Positions 4,620 to 59,188 of a stretch of 64,000 bases of DNA are shown here, in pieces. Where the stretch lies: the IMG/VR virus record IMGVR_UViG_3300033984_000473, positions 62,001 through 126,000 of that record; one strand, 5' to 3'. The position numbers and the translations under genes were made by a program. The notes under the pieces are model-generated. The model did not search any database. It was not told the DNA's origin and saw nothing but the letters and a program-made list of their open reading frames with translations. Numbering within the stretch: the first letter of the stretch is position 1; every line of letters starts with the position of its first letter.

Positions 4620-4635
4620 TGTACACAAATGTGTA
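4620..4635. repeat. TGTACACAAWTGTGTA palindrome, copy 1 of 6
   Basis: Other copies at 14575, 14734, 27858, 28264, 55749. Confidence 0.7.
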
Positions 4636-15003: not shown

Positions 15004-15076
15004 ATGTCCACTTTATCAGATAGAGGCAAACTGGCTTTGTGCAATTAAGGGGGCACGATATGCTTACAACCACTTG

Positions 15077-15149
15077 TGGAACCGACAGGACTCGAACCTG
15101 TGACGTACTACGATGAAGCAGCTGCTCTAACCAACTGAGCTACAGAACC
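15077..15149 (-). tRNA. atypical tRNA-Met(CAT)-like / pseudo-tRNA
   Basis: Canonical D and T arms; 6-nt loop TTCATC; two T-T mismatches in acceptor. Confidence 0.6.
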
Positions 15150-24917: not shown

Positions 24918-25014
24918 AATTTCTAATTTTTAATGTGATTATTAATTTCTTTAGCAAAGATAGAAAAAATAATCCATACTACCAAATGTAATATGGATTA
25001 TTTTCAAATTATTT

Positions 25015-25896
25015 TTAAACCATTTCCAATACGCCACTTTTTCTAGCAACGAACTCCAAAGATTTTTGGTTCATTTTGTAACCACTACCCAACATAATCG
25101 TTTCCAGTTTACCGTTTTCACGTTTCGGTGCAGATAATTCGTGTGTAGTGAATTTCGTAATACCACTATGCAAACCCCAAAGGTTAAGCCCTTTGTCATT
25201 AAATTCGCCCTCAATACAGTTGTACAACGTTTCCATTTTGTTAATGCTACGTGTACTCTTTTCCGACAATTCCTTTATACTTGTCAATTCCTTGTCAAAC
25301 CCTAACAAATACTTAACCATTTCGTCAGCCAATTCTCTAGTACAATCCCTGTCAGCCAGTACGTTATATAGCTCAATTTGTTTAAGGCTACGGTTCAATG
25401 CAGTTTCAATCAAAAATGGAATTTCTTTGATACGGTGTTCAATACTAGCCGAGTGTCTAAATTTCGCTTCGCCTTGCTTATAGAACTTGAAAAACTGATT
25501 AGAACAGCTCATAGTAAAATCCCCAATACCAATAGACAATGAAGTACTACCGTCATTACTATCCAGTACTGTAATGAATTTTTTAATCCTGTCATGCCCT
25601 ACAACGCCATCGCCAGTAATACCTAACTGTAAAAATACCTTGCGACCCTCATTCATAGAACCAGCTTTGGTTACAATCAAATCGTTACCAAACGGTCTAA
25701 TGCCTTGAAGCACCATATCAACGATTTCGTGGTTCTGTGATACTGTATAACCGTCCTTAACAGTATTGATACACTTGCCTAACTTGTCATTGAATAAACC
25801 AAAGTAACCACTAGGATTAAGGTTAGAATCAAATAACGGTCTTTTGCTAATGTTGAAGTCTAAACCGTTCGCTACTAAAATGTCTTGTGTGTTCAT
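25015..25896 (-). CDS. DUF932 (DUF945/TIGR03299-like) protein
   Basis: YTVSQN, AGSMNEGRKVFLQL, DSNDGSTS, CSNQF, HSASI, NLWGL pattern typical of the family. Confidence 0.85.
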   Translation of the reverse strand: MNTQDILVANGLDFNISKRPLFDSNLNPSGYFGLFNDKLGKCINTVKDGYTVSQNHEIVDMVLQGIRPFGNDLIVTKAGSMNEGRKVFLQLGITGDGVVGHDRIKKFITVLDSNDGSTSLSIGIGDFTMSCSNQFFKFYKQGEAKFRHSASIEHRIKEIPFLIETALNRSLKQIELYNVLADRDCTRELADEMVKYLLGFDKELTSIKELSEKSTRSINKMETLYNCIEGEFNDKGLNLWGLHSGITKFTTHELSAPKRENGKLETIMLGSGYKMNQKSLEFVARKSGVLEMV

Positions 25897-26034
25897 ATCT
25901 AAAATTGTTTAATTGATTAGAGTGCAAATATACAACCTTTATTTCATTCCACCAAATAAAAATGCAATTATTTTTAATTTATTTTTTTATGTAAAATAAT
26001 CTATAAAAAATTAGGATATGTAAAAAACATTCCC

Positions 26035-26110
26035 TACCTTTGTACTGTAATTAAATTACGGGTCGCATAGGATGTGAAAGAGTAGACTCCACCGTACCTT
26101 ATACTCAAAT
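26035..26110 (+). ncRNA. AGTAGACTCC-family element, copy 8
   Basis: Core 26080-26090; hairpin TCGCAT(AGG)ATGTGA. Confidence 0.6.
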
Positions 26111-26204
26111 AGCCAAATAGCCAAATACAAAAAACAAAAATGCAAAATAAACCTATAACTTAATATAAGCCTATTTCGCATTTTAAGGTACTTTTAAAGG
26201 ACGT

Positions 26205-27023
26205 TTATACCAATTCCAATTCCTTGGTAGGAACGCTATCATAAATAGCGTTAACCTTATCAAAAATAGCTTGGCTATCTTTGGCTGTTTCAATTACAAA
26301 ACCACTTGTAAAAGCAATTTTATTATCAGCACCTTTGCCTGTCATTTTTTTGTATTTTAAACCACAAATAACATTCTGTTTATCCAAAAATCGTAGGTCG
26401 TCATTATCAGCATTGATAACCTCAAAACCGTTATAAGTAGTAGGTAATTTGTCAAATACCATTGCTACATTAAAACCACGTTTCAATAATTCTAATGATT
26501 TAATATCATTCGTTTCAGAACGTGAAAAAGTCAAATGATAATTACTAGGTAACACTTTGTCAAAACGAAAATGATTTTTTGTATAATCATAAAATTGTAC
26601 ATTCGGGTACATTTCAAAAATGTTTTTAGTATTATTGTCAAATACTTTGTATTTTTCAAATGGCAAATCACTTGTACCATTTAAACGTATAGTAACAATA
26701 GCTTTGTCAGTATGTTTTTTTACCGCTTTGCCAATTTCCACATATAATTGGTTCATAAATTCAATACGACTACTTAAAAAGTATTCAGTTTTGGCAACCC
26801 TACCTTGCATAACATTACTATACATACCGCCAAAACCACTACCAACAAGGCAACTATCAGCACAACCTTTACTTGCATGGCTACATACATTGATACCTTT
26901 GCTATTGGCTGTAAAAGGCGACATATACATTATATAGGTCATATAACCTAATTTTTCTCCTTTTACTGTTTTCGCATTATTAGTACTTAATAATGGTTTT
27001 CTTTTTACTACTTCTACATTCAT
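26205..27023 (-). CDS. GP88-like phage protein
   Basis: NVCSHASKGCADSCL Cys cluster, IRLNGTSD, FYDYTK, YHLTFS, DLRFLD. Confidence 0.8.
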   Translation of the reverse strand: MNVEVVKRKPLLSTNNAKTVKGEKLGYMTYIMYMSPFTANSKGINVCSHASKGCADSCLVGSGFGGMYSNVMQGRVAKTEYFLSSRIEFMNQLYVEIGKAVKKHTDKAIVTIRLNGTSDLPFEKYKVFDNNTKNIFEMYPNVQFYDYTKNHFRFDKVLPSNYHLTFSRSETNDIKSLELLKRGFNVAMVFDKLPTTYNGFEVINADNDDLRFLDKQNVICGLKYKKMTGKGADNKIAFTSGFVIETAKDSQAIFDKVNAIYDSVPTKELELV

Positions 27024-27161
27024 AACTAATTTGTTTTAATTGATTAGAGTGCAAATATACAACTATTATTTTAATATACAAGTTTTTTTGTAATTATTTT
27101 TAATATTTTTTTTATGTGTAAAATAATTCACTTTTTATTTGGTAGTGTCATTTATTATCAC

Positions 27162-27245
27162 TACATTTGTACTGTTGAAATGAAACACCCAAAGCAAGAT
27201 ACCACAAATCTGAGAAGTAGACTCCGTCCTACCTTATATCCAAGT
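27162..27245 (+). ncRNA. AGTAGACTCC-family element, copy 9 (divergent)
   Basis: AAGTAGACTCCGTCCTACCTTAT at 27215-27237. Confidence 0.5.
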
Positions 27246-27502
27246 TATTTAGAACGAATATAAATAAGAAAATAATTTGGTAGATTCAAAAATTTTTTGT
27301 ACCTTTGTGGTTATAATCTATACGAACCAAAAAAGTTTGCAAAGATACAACAAAAATAATTAATATGCAAATTTATTTTACTTGTTTTTTAAAAAAGTTT
27401 ATCGTACCTTTGTACTTCATTCTGCACATTACACATAGTAGTAGTGCCTAGACAAAAACTGCCCAAGTTCATTGTAACTCTGGGCTAAACTTGTTGCACC
27501 TA

Positions 27503-27518
27503 TGTTCCACGTGGAACA
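27503..27518. promoter_or_regulatory. parS site 1
   Basis: Perfect TGTTCCACGTGGAACA. Confidence 0.8.
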
Positions 27519-27540
27519 CTGGGGCGATGACCTATGCAAT

Positions 27541-27556
27541 TGTTCCACGTGGAACA
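27541..27556. promoter_or_regulatory. parS site 2
   Basis: Perfect TGTTCCACGTGGAACA. Confidence 0.8.
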
Positions 27557-27989
27557 TTCAAAAAAATTTTGGCTGAAAAATTTGTGAGAACGAACGGACA
27601 GTATAAAGTTTTTTAAAGATTACCTAGATTTTTTTTATTAACCCTAACACCCAATAATCCCAATGAAATAAGCACTTCCCATTTTTCGGCTATGAAAACT
27701 CGTACTTTTACCACATTATACCATTATTTACCACTTTTTGCTAAAAACTGCAAAAAAGTACATACGTGCTAATGAAGGTACATTTAGGAACATCATAAAT
27801 ACATATATCTGTGTATTAGGTAGATACGTTTTGCCCTAACGGGCAAGTCGATTCCACGTACACAATTGTGTACATAGGACAGTATTATTGCATCTCAATT
27901 TGTGGGAATGCGATATGTACTACTATGTGTTGTTCATAGAGTTTATGGAGTATCCTAGTTTTTCTTTCTTAAGAAATGCTATGCTTTTG

Positions 27990-28238
27990 TTATGCTTTTC
28001 CATTAGGGTTTTCTCCCAGTTCATTTTCTGTATATGAACTTCCTTTACGAAATGTTATTGTGGTAGAAGCTTCGTATGCCATATCTTTGCCACCTCTTAA
28101 ATGTCTAAGAGAATCTTCAAGTTCTGGTATTTCATTCTTGATTACTTCTGCTACGTTTCTTAGTTCGTATGTAGTTCCTAGTATTGGACTATATGACATA
28201 ACTAATATTGGATAGATATTTATTTCTGTTCCTTTCAT
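27990..28238 (-). CDS. hypothetical protein
   Basis: ORF track. Confidence 0.5.
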   Translation of the reverse strand: MKGTEINIYPILVMSYSPILGTTYELRNVAEVIKNEIPELEDSLRHLRGGKDMAYEASTTITFRKGSSYTENELGENPNGKA

Positions 28239-28286
28239 GTGTTTGTTGTTTTATGTTGTTGTATGTACACAATTGTGTGCATTGGG

Positions 28287-28652
28287 TTATTCTTTATTAA
28301 GAGTATCTAATTGTTTTTGTATATCGGATAGCTTTCCTTCAATTTCTTTTTGTTTCCCTATATACTTTTCTATGCTTGTTACATTATCGGTATATATTCT
28401 TGATAGGAATTTCTTTCTTAGTTCTAATTGTCTTATAAGGCATATTCTTTTTACATCGTTGAGATGTGCTGTATGTTGTGGGATTGGTTCAAGGCTTGTT
28501 ACTGGCATCATATCGTATATGTGACCGAGTTCATCTTTTATGTCATAGAAACCATCGTATGCGTAATGGATTTCCACTGGATATTTTTCGTATGGTGTAT
28601 CTAGTAGAGTTCCTGTAAATAGGACAGTTTGTCCTTTGGTGAATGTTTTCAT
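28287..28652 (-). CDS. hypothetical protein
   Basis: Start corrected to MKTF. Confidence 0.65.
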   Translation of the reverse strand: MKTFTKGQTVLFTGTLLDTPYEKYPVEIHYAYDGFYDIKDELGHIYDMMPVTSLEPIPQHTAHLNDVKRICLIRQLELRKKFLSRIYTDNVTSIEKYIGKQKEIEGKLSDIQKQLDTLNKE

Positions 28653-28656
28653 GGTA

Positions 28657-29022
28657 TTAACGTTTATTAGAAATTTTTGATAAATCAATAGTACCGACCA
28701 CTTTAAATGTTGCGAATTGCAATGCGATATTATTACTTCTTTGTTTTTCTTTAGCCAATTGTTCTTTGGTAGGATTTTCTTTTTGTAGCTTAGTTCTAAG
28801 TTTATTAGAGATTTCTTTTCCGTTTCTTCCTATGTGATAATTATGACATACGTTACATTTATAGGATATTACTTTGTGTATTCTATCTGGAATCGCATTT
28901 TCTTTTTTACATTCTTTTATGGCTTCCTCTAGTGTATTGAATTTTTTCTTATTCTTATACACTGGTTTTCCTTCTTCATAACGTAAGAGTGTTTGACATT
29001 GATTTTTGGTAGCGTTTTCCAT
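28657..29022 (-). CDS. basic zinc-ribbon protein
   Basis: YKCNVCHNYHIGR. Confidence 0.7.
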   Translation of the reverse strand: MENATKNQCQTLLRYEEGKPVYKNKKKFNTLEEAIKECKKENAIPDRIHKVISYKCNVCHNYHIGRNGKEISNKLRTKLQKENPTKEQLAKEKQRSNNIALQFATFKVVGTIDLSKISNKR

Positions 29023-29063
29023 AATACAAAGGTACATAAATTAATTGGACTGCACAAGTTTTT

Positions 29064-29408
29064 TTATGAAAAATGTGAGAAGATAAATAGCTTTGGATTT
29101 GTTTGTGGTTCAAATCCGAATACTTCAATGAACTTGGCGATTATCTTATCATCGTCAAACTTTTTAATATCAATATCTACAAAGTCCCACCCTTCATATT
29201 CTTCGTCACAGCTTTGCACGTTAAGTCCAAAGACGTTATAGCTACCACACATTCCATCACAGATTAGTGTATAGTCTTCTCCTTCAAACCCACACATCAT
29301 GGATTCAAACTTTTCATCATAGACATCAATTTCGTTTCCTTCGTTGTCTAGGATTTCGAATGGCAATTTCCAACCATATACAATGTAATCACTTCTATCT
29401 ACTCCCAT
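29064..29408 (-). CDS. hypothetical protein
   Basis: Start corrected to MGVDR. Confidence 0.75.
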   Translation of the reverse strand: MGVDRSDYIVYGWKLPFEILDNEGNEIDVYDEKFESMMCGFEGEDYTLICDGMCGSYNVFGLNVQSCDEEYEGWDFVDIDIKKFDDDKIIAKFIEVFGFEPQTNPKLFIFSHFS

Positions 29409-29758
29409 TATTCTTTTTCTTTTATAAGTTTTAATCCTTCTTGCAGTCCAATTTCCAATGCTTCTTCCCAAGTTGGGAATCTATTAATAGGAAGCTTTGG
29501 GTTATTATGTGAAACGTAAATATCATTTACGGTACATACATATTCTAGTGTTTTATCAAACGCATAACTTTCTCTGGGTGTTACGTGAATATGATATTTT
29601 TCTCTAAGCCATTTTTGAAGTATAGCTTGTGTTGGCACATAGGTATATTCAACATTTTTAATGGTCATATCGTTATTATAATGTATCATTCTACCTATTG
29701 GGTAATTTTTCCCAAAAGCTAAAATAGTAGTTTCAACATTAATTTTTTCTTCTTTCAT
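29408..29758 (-). CDS. hypothetical phage protein
   Basis: LQKWLREKY..EEALEIGLQEGLKLI pattern. Confidence 0.75.
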   Translation of the reverse strand: MKEEKINVETTILAFGKNYPIGRMIHYNNDMTIKNVEYTYVPTQAILQKWLREKYHIHVTPRESYAFDKTLEYVCTVNDIYVSHNNPKLPINRFPTWEEALEIGLQEGLKLIKEKE

Positions 29759-29836
29759 AGCATTATTTAATTTTCTTTATCCACCTTAACCAGATGAATG
29801 TTGTTTGTGTCAGCACCCATGTGATTATTCTCTGTT

Positions 29837-30034
29837 TCATACTAGGTCAGTGGTTATTATTTGTTCTTCTGGTGTTAGTGGTATATTGCTAGGTGATGTA
29901 GAGTGTTGTCCACATACTACGCACCATGTTATACCCAACTTGTTATCTCTAAACTTATGTTTACCGTTAGAACATTGTTGTCTTAGTTTCCAATAGTGTT
30001 CAAGTGTTTGAACCACCTTAACTATTTTACCCAT
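29837..30034 (-). CDS. hypothetical protein
   Basis: CxxC motif. Confidence 0.6.
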   Translation of the reverse strand: MGKIVKVVQTLEHYWKLRQQCSNGKHKFRDNKLGITWCVVCGQHSTSPSNIPLTPEEQIITTDLV

Positions 30035-30442: not shown

Positions 30443-30720
30443 TTGATTTGTTTTAATTTACAACCTCTAAATGTTTTCTGTCCTTTGATATATGGGAATA
30501 GGTTATAGAAGTTTCTCCATACCTTATCGGAACGTTTCAATGATGGCACTCTAACAGATATTTGACCGTAACCACCATCACCACTTTTGACATTGTAGGC
30601 TTTTTGGTTATCTCTGGTAACTTGCTTTGGCATATAGTTATAGTCTGGTCTTCCATTCCATCTAAGTCCCCAGTGTCCGTTATAGGATTTGACTAGTCTG
30701 TATATTGGTTTTTCTTCCAT
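30439..30720 (-). CDS. hypothetical protein
   Basis: Operon context. Confidence 0.7.
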   Translation of the reverse strand: MEEKPIYRLVKSYNGHWGLRWNGRPDYNYMPKQVTRDNQKAYNVKSGDGGYGQISVRVPSLKRSDKVWRNFYNLFPYIKGQKTFRGCKLKQIK

Positions 30721-31469
30721 TAGTATCTTTCGTTAAATCGTTTAAGGATATCTAGTAGATAAGGGTCTAGTTTACTTTCTACGTAGTCTATATCTGCTTG
30801 TGTTAGGTCTTGAAGGTGATAGTTTAGTAGTTCACCAACTATTGATGCGTTTGTATCGGTATCACCGCCACAGCTAACAACGTTTTTGATAGCATCTTGG
30901 GTGTTCTTATCTGAATGATAGATAAATGCACTTTTACAGAATCTAAAAGTATCTTTGGCTTTCACTTCAAACTTTTTAAATGGAAATAATTTAAACTTAA
31001 TAAAGTAGTCATACTCCTTAACGTTTGCATAGTACAGTTCAGCCAGTTCCAACGAATATACAATGCTTTCAGCGTTCACGTGTGATGTTAGGCAAGATTC
31101 AGCGATAAGTTCTTTGGTTGTTAACAAAGCATTTGATAGATACATAAACGGTGCTATTCTCATAAGACAGCCGTTACCCCAAGATTTATTAATGGTACCC
31201 ATTGGTGAGTTAAGCCATTCTTTGAAGTCTTTCCCATAGTGGTCGCCTTGGTATCTCATACCAACTTCTTTGTATGCTTCCTCGAATGATTGGTTATCTA
31301 GGATTGCTTTGGCAGTTGCCAGTGTCATTAGCGTATCATCGCTAAATACTGAATCTGGGTTATGTAGGTTGATTGTATCTTCTGGTGGGAAGTTTGCCAT
31401 AATGGGAAACTCGTAGGGTTGTCCTACGAGGTCACCAAGTATTGCTCCGTATAGTTTATCTTTTTTCAT
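30720..31469 (-). CDS. ADP-ribosylglycohydrolase (DraG/ARH family)
   Basis: GAILGDLVG, FSDDT, GNGCLMR, GGDTDTNASI. Confidence 0.9.
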   Translation of the reverse strand: MKKDKLYGAILGDLVGQPYEFPIMANFPPEDTINLHNPDSVFSDDTLMTLATAKAILDNQSFEEAYKEVGMRYQGDHYGKDFKEWLNSPMGTINKSWGNGCLMRIAPFMYLSNALLTTKELIAESCLTSHVNAESIVYSLELAELYYANVKEYDYFIKFKLFPFKKFEVKAKDTFRFCKSAFIYHSDKNTQDAIKNVVSCGGDTDTNASIVGELLNYHLQDLTQADIDYVESKLDPYLLDILKRFNERY

Positions 31470-31519
31470 AGTACAAAGGTACATATAATATTTCATATAT
31501 GCAAATTTAATATTAGAAA

Positions 31520-55748: not shown

Positions 55749-55768
55749 ATGTACACAATTGTGTACAT
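55749..55768. repeat. perfect 20-bp palindrome ATGTACACAATTGTGTACAT
   Basis: Best copy of the six-member family. Confidence 0.75.
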
Positions 55769-58528: not shown

Positions 58529-58627
58529 TACATAGCGAGGGAATCGAACCCCCATCTCCGCAAGCGATTGGTACTGCATCTCACGATGTGCTCCCATTTC
58601 GGCACTCTACCACTGAGCTAGCTACAT
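58529..58627 (-). tRNA. tRNA-like RNA with extended anticodon arm (99 nt), G3-U70
   Basis: D-arm GCTCAGTGGTAGAGT; T-arm GGGGG-TTCGATT-CCCTC; no 7-nt anticodon loop. Confidence 0.55.
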
Positions 58628-58735
58628 ATTCGGTTATACTATATGGTGGTCTATCACCTTAGCCTTTCGCTAAAACTGTTAATGTGTGCCTCACTGGACT
58701 ACTCAACCAATGTCGCTTTAATAGTATAACCTAGA

Positions 58736-58804
58736 AACTCATACTGGATTCGAACCAGTGTCTGCGGGCTCCACGCCCCCCGTGGTTCCACTCCACTAAT
58801 GAAT
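58736..58804 (-). tRNA. atypical short tRNA (anticodon possibly TGG, uncertain)
   Basis: D stem GTGG/CCAC; T-arm ACTGG-TTCGAAT-CCAGT; irregular anticodon arm. Confidence 0.5.
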
Positions 58805-58902
58805 CAACTATCACCATGTCGCTCGGCAAAGCTAAACGTAATAGAAAGGATTATAACCGTCTGAAAGTTTGCCGACCTTCATGTTGCTATTCCCCAATTT
58901 TG

Positions 58903-59001
58903 TGCGAGAGGGTGGATTCGAACCACCGACACCTAGTCCCTAGTTGTTCCCTTGTACTTTGGGCTAAAGACCTTAGCGTTTACCAACTTCGCCACTCTCG
59001 C
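58903..59001 (-). tRNA. tRNA-Leu(TAG)-like with insertion in the anticodon loop (99 nt)
   Basis: Perfect acceptor GCGAGAG/CTCTCGC, Leu-type D-arm, TT-TAG followed by extra hairpin CCC..GGG. Confidence 0.65.
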
Positions 59002-59114
59002 AGTTTCTAGTCTTTCCCAGTGTCAACCATTGCAGTATGAAGAGTGCACATCGTCATTGCCAATTACCATAGTTTGTATACAGTGACCATAGGGCTTAAC
59101 CGTTGGATTTCTTG

Positions 59115-59188
59115 TGGAAGTAACGGGACTCTAACCCGTGTTCTCGCAGCTACAGCCGCTTTATACTATACTATTGTACTATACTCCC
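59115..59188 (-). tRNA. atypical tRNA (GTA in shortened loop; G3-U70 acceptor)
   Basis: GGGAGTA/TACTTCC-A; T-loop TTAGAGT is non-canonical. Confidence 0.5.

What the first reader, a model, noticed from the sequence alone, without database searches (positions are those of the whole stretch)
27503..27556. Two perfect chromosomal-type parS sites in a phage intergenic region
Seen: TGTTCCACGTGGAACA twice, 38 bp apart start to start, in a ~950-bp gene-free stretch. Established: this fits the conserved bacterial parS palindrome bound by ParB, which also loads SMC. Inference: the phage recruits or titrates host ParB/SMC for positioning or segregation of its DNA (carrier or pseudolysogenic state) or to disturb host segregation.
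Basis: partly seen in the sequence, partly recalled or inferred. Interest (0 to 1): 0.75.

Follow-up and report, generated by a model that had tools for sequence, protein, structure and literature searches.

The report
Orphan host-type parS pair in phage
A freshwater jumbo phage of Bacteroidota carries two perfect copies of the bacterial chromosome "centromere" site parS but no ParB of its own, and relatives show the site is kept by selection, so the phage most likely borrows the host's segregation protein, as phage phi29 is already known to do in Bacillus.

Summary
TGTTCCACGTGGAACA occurs exactly twice, at 27503-27518 and 27541-27556, in a 966-bp gene-free stretch. These are the only copies (up to 3 mismatches) in the 232,931-bp virus record, where 2e-5 are expected by chance. 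It is not an assembly chimera: two independent lake metagenomes and a separate JGI contig carry the same pair joined to the same phage gene. Among related phages, 15 of 74 loci have parS-type sites in the homologous intergenic regions. The 16-mer is an invariant island (pairwise identity 0.97, against 0.30 for the flank). It varies only at parS-tolerated positions and is gained or lost as a ~30-bp cassette. The phage sequence held (about 64% of the genome) encodes no ParB, ParA or integrase. Promoter and ribosome-binding signals indicate a Bacteroidota host, and 60 of 81 Bacteroidota genomes carry clustered sites of this family. More than 100 other viral contigs carry such pairs, almost all without ParB. 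The concept has a precedent: phi29 has five parS sites bound by host Spo0J. I therefore file this as a new member of a known kind, in a host that does not sporulate. ParB binding and the biological function remain untested.

The parts
27503..27518 (.). parS copy 1: perfect 16-bp palindrome TGTTCCACGTGGAACA
   Evidence: Exact match. Homologous position conserved in relatives.
27519..27540 (.). 22-bp spacer between the two parS copies. It is not conserved among relatives that have two copies (spacings 38, 40 and 43 bp).
27541..27556 (.). parS copy 2: perfect 16-bp palindrome TGTTCCACGTGGAACA
   Evidence: Exact match. Absent in the single-copy relatives L155, L156, L162, L164, L167 and L175.
27461..27485 (-). 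Context: hairpin (GCCCA...TGGGC) followed by a T-rich tract on the gene strand, immediately after the parS pair. Possibly a terminator or RNA element of the upstream operon.
   Evidence: Position conserved in relatives with some compensatory changes. Not called by the strict terminator scan.
27024..27989 (.). Context: 966-bp intergenic region containing the sites. It is a mosaic of promoter-like modules that recur in the intergenic regions of relatives.
   Evidence: ORF list. BLAST of the region against relatives.
27138..27169 (+). Context: Bacteroidota-type promoter motif (TTTG...TAnnTTTG), plus strand
27276..27307 (+). Context: Bacteroidota-type promoter motif, plus strand
   Evidence: Block conserved with L022.
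27340..27371 (-). Context: Bacteroidota-type promoter motif, minus strand
27052..27059 (-). Context: -7 box (TATATTTG) of the conserved promoter of the GP88 gene
27216..27225 (-). Context: core (GGAGTCTACT) of a ~60-nt element repeated 9 times in the small-gene block of the phage
26205..27023 (-). Neighbouring gene: GP88 family protein (PF17338). parS-type sites flank this gene in relatives.
   Evidence: Pfam E 1.3e-38. Site positions relative to the gene. Model pLDDT 82.7 with only weak radical-SAM/TIM-barrel-like fold matches.
25015..25896 (-). Neighbouring gene: DUF932 / TIGR03299 phage/plasmid-like protein. Present in all 9 parS-positive relatives with enough flank.
27990..28238 (-). Upstream neighbouring ORF (82 aa), no family match

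Best explanation
The two 16-mers are genuine chromosomal-type parS sites kept by selection on the phage genome.

The phage appears to have no ParB of its own, so the binder is the ParB of its Bacteroidota host. The proposed mechanism is inferred from established ParB biology and not shown here. A ParB dimer nucleates on each palindrome, closes as a CTP-dependent clamp and slides onto flanking phage DNA. This builds a partition complex that couples the non-integrated phage genome to the host ParA gradient and/or to SMC loading.

The most likely benefit is positioning and inheritance of phage genomes by both daughter cells while lysis is deferred (a carrier or pseudolysogenic phase). This would be the non-sporulating counterpart of phi29's Spo0J-dependent delivery of its genome into the spore. 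The trait is accessory: close relatives gain and lose it as a ~30-bp cassette.
For: - **Identity of the site.** The 16-mer equals P. aeruginosa parS2/parS3, the highest-affinity ParB site. With parAB it stabilises an unstable plasmid (PMC4368675).
- **More than chance.** Two sites are observed against 2e-5 expected.
- **Real DNA.** Independent samples X2 and X3 and JGI contig L152 carry the pair joined to GP88.
- **Selection.** There are 24 parS-type sites in 238.5 kb of GP88-anchored relatives, against about 0.003 expected, all in the intergenic regions flanking GP88. Pairwise identity is 0.968 in the site and 0.297 in the flank. The only variants are C5>T and T1>G, and C5>T is a natural chromosomal variant.
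- **Copy number.** Copies vary between 1 and 2 with unrelated spacers.
- **No phage partner found.** There is no ParB_N, HTH_ParB, AAA_31, CbiA or integrase in the 233 kb.
- **Host.** The Bacteroidota promoter motif occurs 80 times on the coding strand, against 6 in the control. A Shine-Dalgarno core precedes 1 of 227 ORFs, and leaders are A-rich.
- **Host site usage.** 60 of 81 Bacteroidota genomes carry 1-5 clustered sites of this family, including pairs 37-58 bp apart. A canonical parAB operon is present in Flavobacterium soli.
- **Precedent.** phi29 has five parS sites bound by host Spo0J (PMC2731898). Four exact sites plus one degenerate site were found directly in its genome.
- **Generality.** 19 viral contigs carry pairs of this variant and more than 100 carry pairs of the other. 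Of these, 18 of 19 and 46 of 50 tested lack ParB.
Against: - There is no binding or functional data for this system.
- The host species is unknown, so its ParB and its own parS variant are unknown.
- The phage record is about 64% complete, so a phage ParB could lie in the missing part.
- The complete 362-kb relative lacks both parS and ParB. The site is therefore dispensable, and that genome cannot confirm the orphan status.
- No integrase, plasmid-type replication gene or other marker of a persistent lifestyle was found.
- The site is not at a GC-skew or strand-switch point.
- Only 23 of 301 Bacteroidota genomes have this exact C/G variant.
Confidence: 0.55

Rival explanations
1. Host ParB is loaded at the sites, but its role is regulatory. 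The ParB clamps spread over, or block, the dense cluster of early-type promoters around the site and silence them (KorB-like or P. aeruginosa ParB-like repression). This would set or stabilise a quiescent state, with no segregation role.
For: - The pair sits among at least five Bacteroidota-type promoter motifs on both strands within about 450 bp.
- In relatives the downstream pair lies exactly between a terminator-like hairpin and the next promoter.
- Silencing of nearby genes by ParB spreading is documented (PMC4820964; abstract of bioRxiv 10.1101/151340).
Against: - The position relative to promoters is not fixed among relatives: 480-990 bp upstream of GP88, or 29-83 bp downstream.
- Close relatives with 97% identical promoter regions lack the site.
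- This reading is compatible with, and not exclusive of, the segregation reading.
Confidence: 0.15
2. The sites act as a decoy. As the phage genome replicates, the sites titrate host ParB away from the chromosome, disturbing host segregation, SMC loading or ParA/DnaA control to the phage's benefit.
For: - The sites are of the top-affinity type, and they would multiply with phage replication.
- An ectopic perfect parS disturbs segregation in P. aeruginosa (PMC4368675).
Against: - There are only one or two sites per 230-360 kb genome, which is a weak sink.
- No obvious benefit exists for a phage that kills its host quickly.
- phi29, the one studied case, uses the sites in cis for its own genome.
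Confidence: 0.1
3. The palindrome is bound by a phage-encoded protein. This would be either a ParB in the unsequenced third of the genome or an unrecognised DNA-binding protein that has converged on the same sequence.
For: - The record is about 64% complete.
- All 9 parS-positive relatives with enough flank carry DUF932, against 6 of 25 parS-negative ones.
- An unrelated phage contig (L005) has a GP88 homologue about 0.9 kb from its parS pair.
Against: - No ParB-family or ParA-family match was found at E<=1 in 233 kb.
- GP88 models as an enzyme-like fold with three invariant cysteines, not a DNA-binding protein.
- DUF932 and GP88 are present in only 4 and 2 of 51 unrelated parS-pair contigs.
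- 0 of 9 near-complete parS-pair phages have ParB.
- The variants tolerated are exactly those of chromosomal parS.
Confidence: 0.1
4. The palindromes act as RNA or DNA structure (a hairpin, terminator or cruciform), and their match to parS is incidental.
For: - As RNA, the two copies pair with each other into a long stem (z = -5.0).
- A metatranscriptome contig covers 27467-27617.
- In some unrelated phages the site sits in an extended palindrome flanked by A and T runs.
Against: - Many relatives have a single copy, so the long stem is not conserved.
- The palindrome shows no compensatory change: sequence, not pairing, is what is kept. C5>T and T1>G are uncompensated.
- There is no T-run after either copy, and no terminator was called.
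- Chance identity to a 16-mer is about 2e-5 per genome.
Confidence: 0.04
5. The sites are an artefact or neutral passenger: either an assembly chimera with host DNA, or a recently captured host fragment with no function.
For: The local GC content around the sites is somewhat higher than in the AT-rich surroundings.
Against: - Contigs from independent samples span the junctions with 0 differences (X2 26880-27689; X3 27449-27604).
- JGI contig L152 has the same pair.
- The site is conserved across relatives with 72-98% GP88 identity while the flanks have diverged.
- Only about 30 bp differs between carriers and non-carriers, so no host gene fragment is involved.
Confidence: 0.02

Closest known systems
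phi29-family phages: parS sites bound by host Spo0J (ParB) for spore entrapment (Meijer et al. 2005, as described in PMC2731898 and PMC9437464)
   Same: - A phage without its own ParB carries chromosomal-type parS sites.
- phi29's four exact sites read TGTTTCACGTGGAACA, the same variant found in relatives L162, L164, L165, L167, L171 and L216 of this phage.
- Host ParB is the binder, and the effect is in cis on the phage genome.
   Different: - phi29 is a 19-kb protein-primed podovirus of a spore-forming Firmicute. Its five sites are dispersed over the right half and lie mostly inside genes, and they serve delivery into the prespore together with Spo0A boxes.
- Here the phage is a jumbo phage of about 360 kb in a non-sporulating Bacteroidota host. 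It has one tandem pair in one intergenic region, and the trait is polymorphic among close relatives.
- Spore entrapment cannot be the purpose here.
Chromosomal parS clusters (P. aeruginosa parS2/parS3; Bacteroidota chromosomal clusters)
   Same: - The 16-bp sequence is identical.
- There are few copies per replicon.
- Tandem pairs 37-58 bp apart also occur in Bacteroidota chromosomes.
   Different: - The sites are on a virus, not next to an origin or a parAB operon.
- There is no cognate ParB on the replicon.
Plasmid and phage-plasmid ParABS partition cassettes (P1, N15, F sopABC)
   Same: - A centromere-like repeat serves an extrachromosomal replicon.
- Some of the other viral contigs hold the site in 38-45-bp tandem arrays reminiscent of sopC.
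   Different: - Those elements encode their own ParA and ParB and use element-specific centromeres.
- Here no parA or parB was found, and the site is the universal chromosomal one.
KorB-OB of RK2/RA3: a ParB-family clamp as transcriptional silencer
   Same: A ParB-family protein loaded at a 16-bp-class palindrome next to promoters can silence them.
   Different: KorB is plasmid-encoded and recognises its own operator. No such protein is seen here.

Membership tests
Chromosomal-type parS (ParB nucleation site) | 16-bp palindrome fitting TGTTNCACGTGNAACA | tested here: met
   Two exact matches to the perfect palindrome.
Chromosomal-type parS (ParB nucleation site) | The same sequence is experimentally bound by a chromosomal ParB somewhere | tested here: met
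   It is identical to P. aeruginosa parS2/parS3, which has the highest ParB affinity (PMC4368675). This evidence comes from the literature, not from a test in this system.
Chromosomal-type parS (ParB nucleation site) | Few, clustered copies per replicon, far above chance | tested here: met
   There are 2 copies in 232,931 bp and none with up to 3 mismatches elsewhere, against 2e-5 expected.
Chromosomal-type parS (ParB nucleation site) | Sequence, not merely pairing, is conserved among relatives | tested here: met
   Pairwise identity is 0.968 in the site and 0.297 in the flank. Variants occur only at positions 1 and 5 and are uncompensated.
Chromosomal-type parS (ParB nucleation site) | A cognate ParB is available in the cell | tested here: inconclusive
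   The host phylum was inferred as Bacteroidota. ParB and this site family are common there. The host species is unknown.
Chromosomal-type parS (ParB nucleation site) | ParB binds and spreads from the site in vivo | not testable with these tools
   The complex-prediction job was not folded. ChIP or EMSA is needed.
phi29-type hijack of host ParB by a phage | The phage lacks its own ParB and ParA | tested here: inconclusive
   None was found in the 233 kb held, but the record is about 64% complete.
phi29-type hijack of host ParB by a phage | Phage sites are identical to the host-type chromosomal parS | tested here: met
phi29-type hijack of host ParB by a phage | ParB-dependent relocation of the phage genome (into the prespore in phi29) | not testable with these tools
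   Bacteroidota do not form endospores (general knowledge). An analogous segregation phenotype would have to be measured.
phi29-type hijack of host ParB by a phage | Coupled suppression of the lytic cycle through host-regulator sites (Spo0A boxes in phi29) | not tested
   No candidate host regulator motif was searched for.
Plasmid / phage-plasmid ParABS cassette | parA and parB genes encoded next to the centromere | tested here: not met
   The neighbours are GP88, DUF932 and small ORFs without Par domains. No Par families were found in the record.
Intrinsic terminator / structured RNA | A stem kept by compensatory change, followed by a U-run | tested here: not met
   The 16-mer shows no covariation. 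There is no T-run and no terminator call. No Rfam family matches in the region.

The most novel reading that the evidence does not exclude
Orphan chromosomal parS sites may be a widespread, repeatedly evolved phage device. Lineages from phi29-like podoviruses to Bacteroidota jumbo phages would insert one or two host-type parS sites, as ~30-bp cassettes, into insulated intergenic slots. That would give plasmid-like positioning and inheritance (and possibly SMC loading) with no partition gene of their own. Gain and loss of the cassette would toggle a carrier-state capacity among otherwise near-identical phages, well beyond the sporulation-specific case known for phi29.
Probability: 0.3. Interest if true: 0.75.

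Novelty: new member of a known kind. Interest (0 to 1): 0.5.

Why it matters
If host ParB is loaded on this phage's DNA, a virus with no partition genes can be positioned and inherited like a low-copy plasmid. That would give a concrete molecular handle on carrier-state or pseudolysogenic infection in abundant freshwater Bacteroidota, where such lifestyles are suspected but poorly explained.

The natural presence/absence polymorphism is useful for experiments. Near-identical phages with and without a ~30-bp parS cassette amount to a ready-made comparison.

More than 100 other viral contigs carry tandem parS pairs without ParB. This suggests the phi29 mechanism is far more general than the single sporulation-linked example in the literature. 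It also matters for annotation, because parS on a contig is not evidence that the contig is chromosomal or plasmid DNA.

Tried and rejected
- **Cultured phages.** BLASTN of 25000-30000 against cultured phages gave no match. GP88 protein against cultured phages gave only matches of 46% identity or less (pelagiphages, XacN1-like jumbo phages), so there is no cultured relative and no host from that route.
- **Rfam.** At gathering thresholds, only tRNAs were found elsewhere in the window.
- **GP88 as a partition or DNA-binding protein.** Rejected. It has no PDB sequence match. The model is good (pLDDT 82.7) but gives only weak TIM-barrel/radical-SAM-like fold matches with E>0.05. The atlas look-alike search added nothing.
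- **DUF932 or GP88 as general partners of phage parS.** Rejected as a general rule: they occur in 4 of 51 and 2 of 51 unrelated parS-pair contigs. The association within the clade is confounded by relatedness.
- **ParB-DNA complex prediction.** The tool did not fold it, so it is no evidence either way.
- **Origin-proximal location.** The site is not at a GC-skew or strand switch.
- **ParB-dependent phage T-dioxygenases** (PMC13229309). Those ParB-like proteins lack a DNA-binding domain and do not act at parS.
- **An 'ACAAGTTTAGC' block shared with L022.** I first took it as evidence of an RNA gene. A 14-mer with one mismatch between two 1.4-kb AT-rich regions is near chance expectation. The hairpin beside it is conserved only modestly.
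- **Literature.** Searches for natural orphan parS in jumbo phages or carrier-state phages found nothing beyond phi29.

Full report
**1. The observation**

The window carries TGTTCCACGTGGAACA at 27503-27518 and 27541-27556, and nowhere else even with 3 mismatches. The window is bases 62001-126000 of a 232,931-bp linear virus record that CheckV rates about 64% complete. The two sites are the only ones in that record. From base composition, 2e-5 exact sites are expected per genome.

The sites lie in a 966-bp stretch between two minus-strand genes. One is a GP88-family gene (26205-27023). The other is an 82-aa ORF (27990-28238). The spacer and outer flanks of the two copies are unrelated, so the repeat unit is exactly the 16-mer. 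The standard genetic code fits the genome.

**2. Not an artefact**

Contigs from two independent lake metagenomes span the region without differences: X2 over 26880-27689, reaching into the GP88 gene, and X3 over 27449-27604. A separate JGI contig (L152, GP88 98% identical) has the same pair 38 bp apart.

A freshwater metatranscriptome also contains a read-length contig over 27467-27617, at a depth similar to the flanking genes. This may be transcription or DNA carry-over, and I give it no weight.

**3. Host**

The runs that hold the sequence are from lake, river and other freshwater samples. Two independent signals point to Bacteroidota:

- The Bacteroidota promoter motif TTTG-N17-23-TAnnTTTG occurs 80 times on the coding strand, against 6 in the reversed control. 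It is conserved upstream of GP88 in relatives.
- Only 1 of 227 ORFs has a Shine-Dalgarno core upstream, below the 3% background. The leaders are A-rich.

Both are hallmarks of Bacteroidota gene expression (established knowledge). The host species is unknown, and no cultured phage is close.

**4. Comparative evidence: the key result**

I anchored on the GP88 protein and fetched 10 viral and 74 metagenomic related loci. Fifteen of the 74 carry parS-type sites with at most 1 mismatch. That is 24 sites in 238.5 kb, where about 0.003 are expected. All carriers have GP88 at 72% identity or more to the window's copy. Among loci with enough flank on both sides, 10 of 32 are carriers.

The sites always lie in the intergenic regions that flank GP88:

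- Some lie 480-990 bp upstream, at the position homologous to the window's pair.
- Others lie 29-83 bp downstream, between a terminator-like hairpin and the next promoter.

In the alignment of the upstream regions, the 16-mer is an invariant island in diverged DNA. Mean pairwise identity is 0.968 in the site and 0.297 in the adjacent 12 bases. Only two variants occur:

- C5>T, giving TGTTTCACGTGGAACA.
- T1>G.

Neither is compensated on the other arm. C5>T is a natural chromosomal variant that co-occurs with the C/G form inside single Bacteroidota parS clusters. Copy number is 1 or 2. Where there are two copies, the spacers (38, 40 and 43 bp upstream; 24-25 bp downstream) are unrelated in sequence.

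Two relatives with about 97% identical intergenic regions differ by a ~31-bp insert that holds the site (L175). The other one (L023, from a complete 362-kb genome) has a different 35-bp insert with another palindrome. That complete relative has no parS and no ParB anywhere.

So the site is selected for its sequence. It is dispensable, and it turns over as a small cassette.

**5. Who binds it?**

Six-frame HMM searches of the 233 kb found no ParB_N, HTH_ParB, AAA_31 or CbiA (ParA) and no tyrosine integrase. There was only a sub-threshold SMC_N-like match outside the window.

The neighbours are not Par proteins:

- GP88 gives a confident model (pLDDT 82.7) with three invariant cysteines. It has only weak matches to radical-SAM/TIM-barrel enzymes.
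- DUF932/TIGR03299 is a family of unknown function associated with mobile elements.

All 9 parS-positive relatives with enough flank have DUF932, against 6 of 25 parS-negative ones. This is confounded by relatedness. Among 51 unrelated viral contigs with parS pairs, only 4 have DUF932 and 2 have GP88.

On the host side:

- 23 of 301 sampled Bacteroidota genomes have the exact C/G palindrome.
- 60 of 81 have one of the four canonical variants, at 1-5 clustered copies per genome. The reversed control gave none.
- Canonical ParB is present in 4 of the 5 Bacteroidota genomes examined at E<=1e-10, including a parA-parB operon in Flavobacterium soli.

The exact 16-mer is the highest-affinity ParB site of P. 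aeruginosa. With parAB it stabilises an unstable plasmid, and excess ParB blocks plasmids that carry it (PMC4368675). Host ParB is therefore the most economical binder. That is an inference and has not been shown. An attempted ParB-DNA complex prediction was not folded and is not evidence.

**6. Structure alternative**

Folded as RNA, the two copies pair with each other (z = -5.0). This follows trivially from having two identical palindromes, and it cannot form in the many single-copy relatives. The palindrome shows no covariation, whereas the neighbouring hairpin (27461-27485, minus strand) keeps its place with some compensatory change. No terminator was called in the region, and no Rfam family matches there.

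**7. How general, and what is known**

Nineteen IMG/VR contigs with GC from 28 to 67% and unrelated flanks carry pairs of the exact 16-mer. Eighteen of them have no ParB above threshold, no ParA and no integrase. Several hold the site in 38-45-bp tandem arrays.

More than 100 contigs carry pairs of TGTTTCACGTGAAACA. Of 50 tested, 4 have any ParB_N match, and 0 of the 9 near-complete ones do. One complete 14-kb genome with inverted terminal repeats is a phi29-like podovirus.

That led to the precedent. phi29 carries five parS sites bound by host Spo0J and uses the host segregation machinery to enter the prespore (PMC2731898; PMC9437464). I confirmed four exact TGTTTCACGTGGAACA sites plus one degenerate site in the phi29 genome. 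They are dispersed and mostly lie inside genes. I found no report of natural orphan parS in jumbo phages, in Bacteroidota phages or in carrier-state phages.

**8. Mechanism and verdict**

- **Shown:** a perfect chromosomal-type parS pair, real and under sequence-level selection, in a clade of freshwater Bacteroidota phages. No phage ParB or ParA is in the sequence held, and the host phylum uses the same site family.
- **Inferred:** host ParB nucleates on the sites, clamps and spreads with CTP, and links the phage genome to ParA-driven positioning and/or SMC loading. The likely benefit is inheritance of unintegrated genomes while lysis is deferred.
- **Rivals:** ParB-mediated silencing of the surrounding promoters, titration of host ParB, and an unseen phage binder. 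None is excluded.

Because the core idea is established for phi29, I rate this a new member of a known kind. The points of real interest are the non-sporulating host, the jumbo phage, the cassette-like polymorphism and the apparent breadth across viral contigs.

Noticed in passing
window 4205, 4640, 6426, 8109, 10950, 13511, 24474, 26081, 27216 (core GGAGTCTACT): A ~60-nt element (core GGAGTCTACT, then CGTGACCC and TTTCAACACTACA) occurs 9 times, against 0 in the reversed control. It occurs only in the small-gene block, usually just after T-runs, and is also seen in relatives (L022, L171, L216). It looks like a phage-specific promoter or leader, perhaps for a phage RNA polymerase.
   Followed up: partly
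window 27858-27873, 28265-28280, 55751-55766 (degenerate copies at 4621 and 14735): A second 16-bp palindrome, GTACACAATTGTGTAC, recurs in intergenic regions of this phage and of relatives (L022, L023, L180). It may be an operator for a phage regulator.
   Followed up: partly
L023:3120-3160 (complete 362-kb relative): Near the homologous position, where L175 carries a ~31-bp parS cassette, L023 has a different 35-bp insert with the palindrome GGCCATGATGGCC. This intergenic slot seems to be a hot spot for small palindromic cassettes.
   Followed up: partly
window 26205-27023 (-): GP88 (PF17338) has invariant C47, C54 and C58 (Cx6Cx3C). Its confident model weakly resembles radical-SAM/TIM-barrel enzymes such as spore photoproduct lyase and lipoyl synthase. 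Its function is unknown. Homologues sit in the early regions of pelagiphages and in Xanthomonas/Stenotrophomonas jumbo phages.
   Followed up: partly
window 25015-25896 (-) and relatives: The DUF932/TIGR03299 gene is present in all 9 parS-positive relatives with enough flank, against 6 of 25 parS-negative ones. An unrelated contig (L005) has a GP88 homologue about 0.9 kb from its parS pair. This could be shared ancestry or a real link.
   Followed up: partly
L008:14060-14151, L017:19-75, L018:5459-5519: In some unrelated viral contigs the parS 16-mer is embedded in 38-45-bp tandem repeat units, often at contig ends where assemblies break. This resembles plasmid centromere arrays such as sopC.
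   Followed up: no
L239 (14,090 bp, ITRs, CheckV 100%) and many 13-18 kb contigs of the same data set (L226-L304): A large group of phi29-like gut podoviruses carries a tandem pair of TGTTTCACGTGAAACA in one intergenic region (L239:5963-6011), and those tested have no ParB. This extends the phi29 parS observation to uncultured relatives.
   Followed up: partly
window 58529-59188 and 15076-15149 (-): Rfam calls tRNAs of about 99 nt at 58529-58627 and 58903-59001 that ARAGORN does not report, so they may contain introns. ARAGORN reports a tRNA with an undetermined anticodon at 15076-15149.
   Followed up: no
window 27467-27617: A freshwater metatranscriptome (X22) has a 153-nt contig exactly over the parS pair (1 difference, AA inserted after 27559), at a depth similar to neighbouring genes. 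This may be transcription through the region or DNA carry-over.
   Followed up: no
G000:C1:169321-169842 (-), outside the window: A sub-threshold SMC_N-like match (E 6e-5, 19 bits) in a 274-aa frame. It may be a RecN/SbcC-type ATPase and was not examined.
   Followed up: no
window 30720-31496 (-): An ADP-ribosylglycohydrolase gene (Pfam E 4e-23) lies 3 kb from the site. It could relate to counter-defence against ADP-ribosylating host systems.
   Followed up: no
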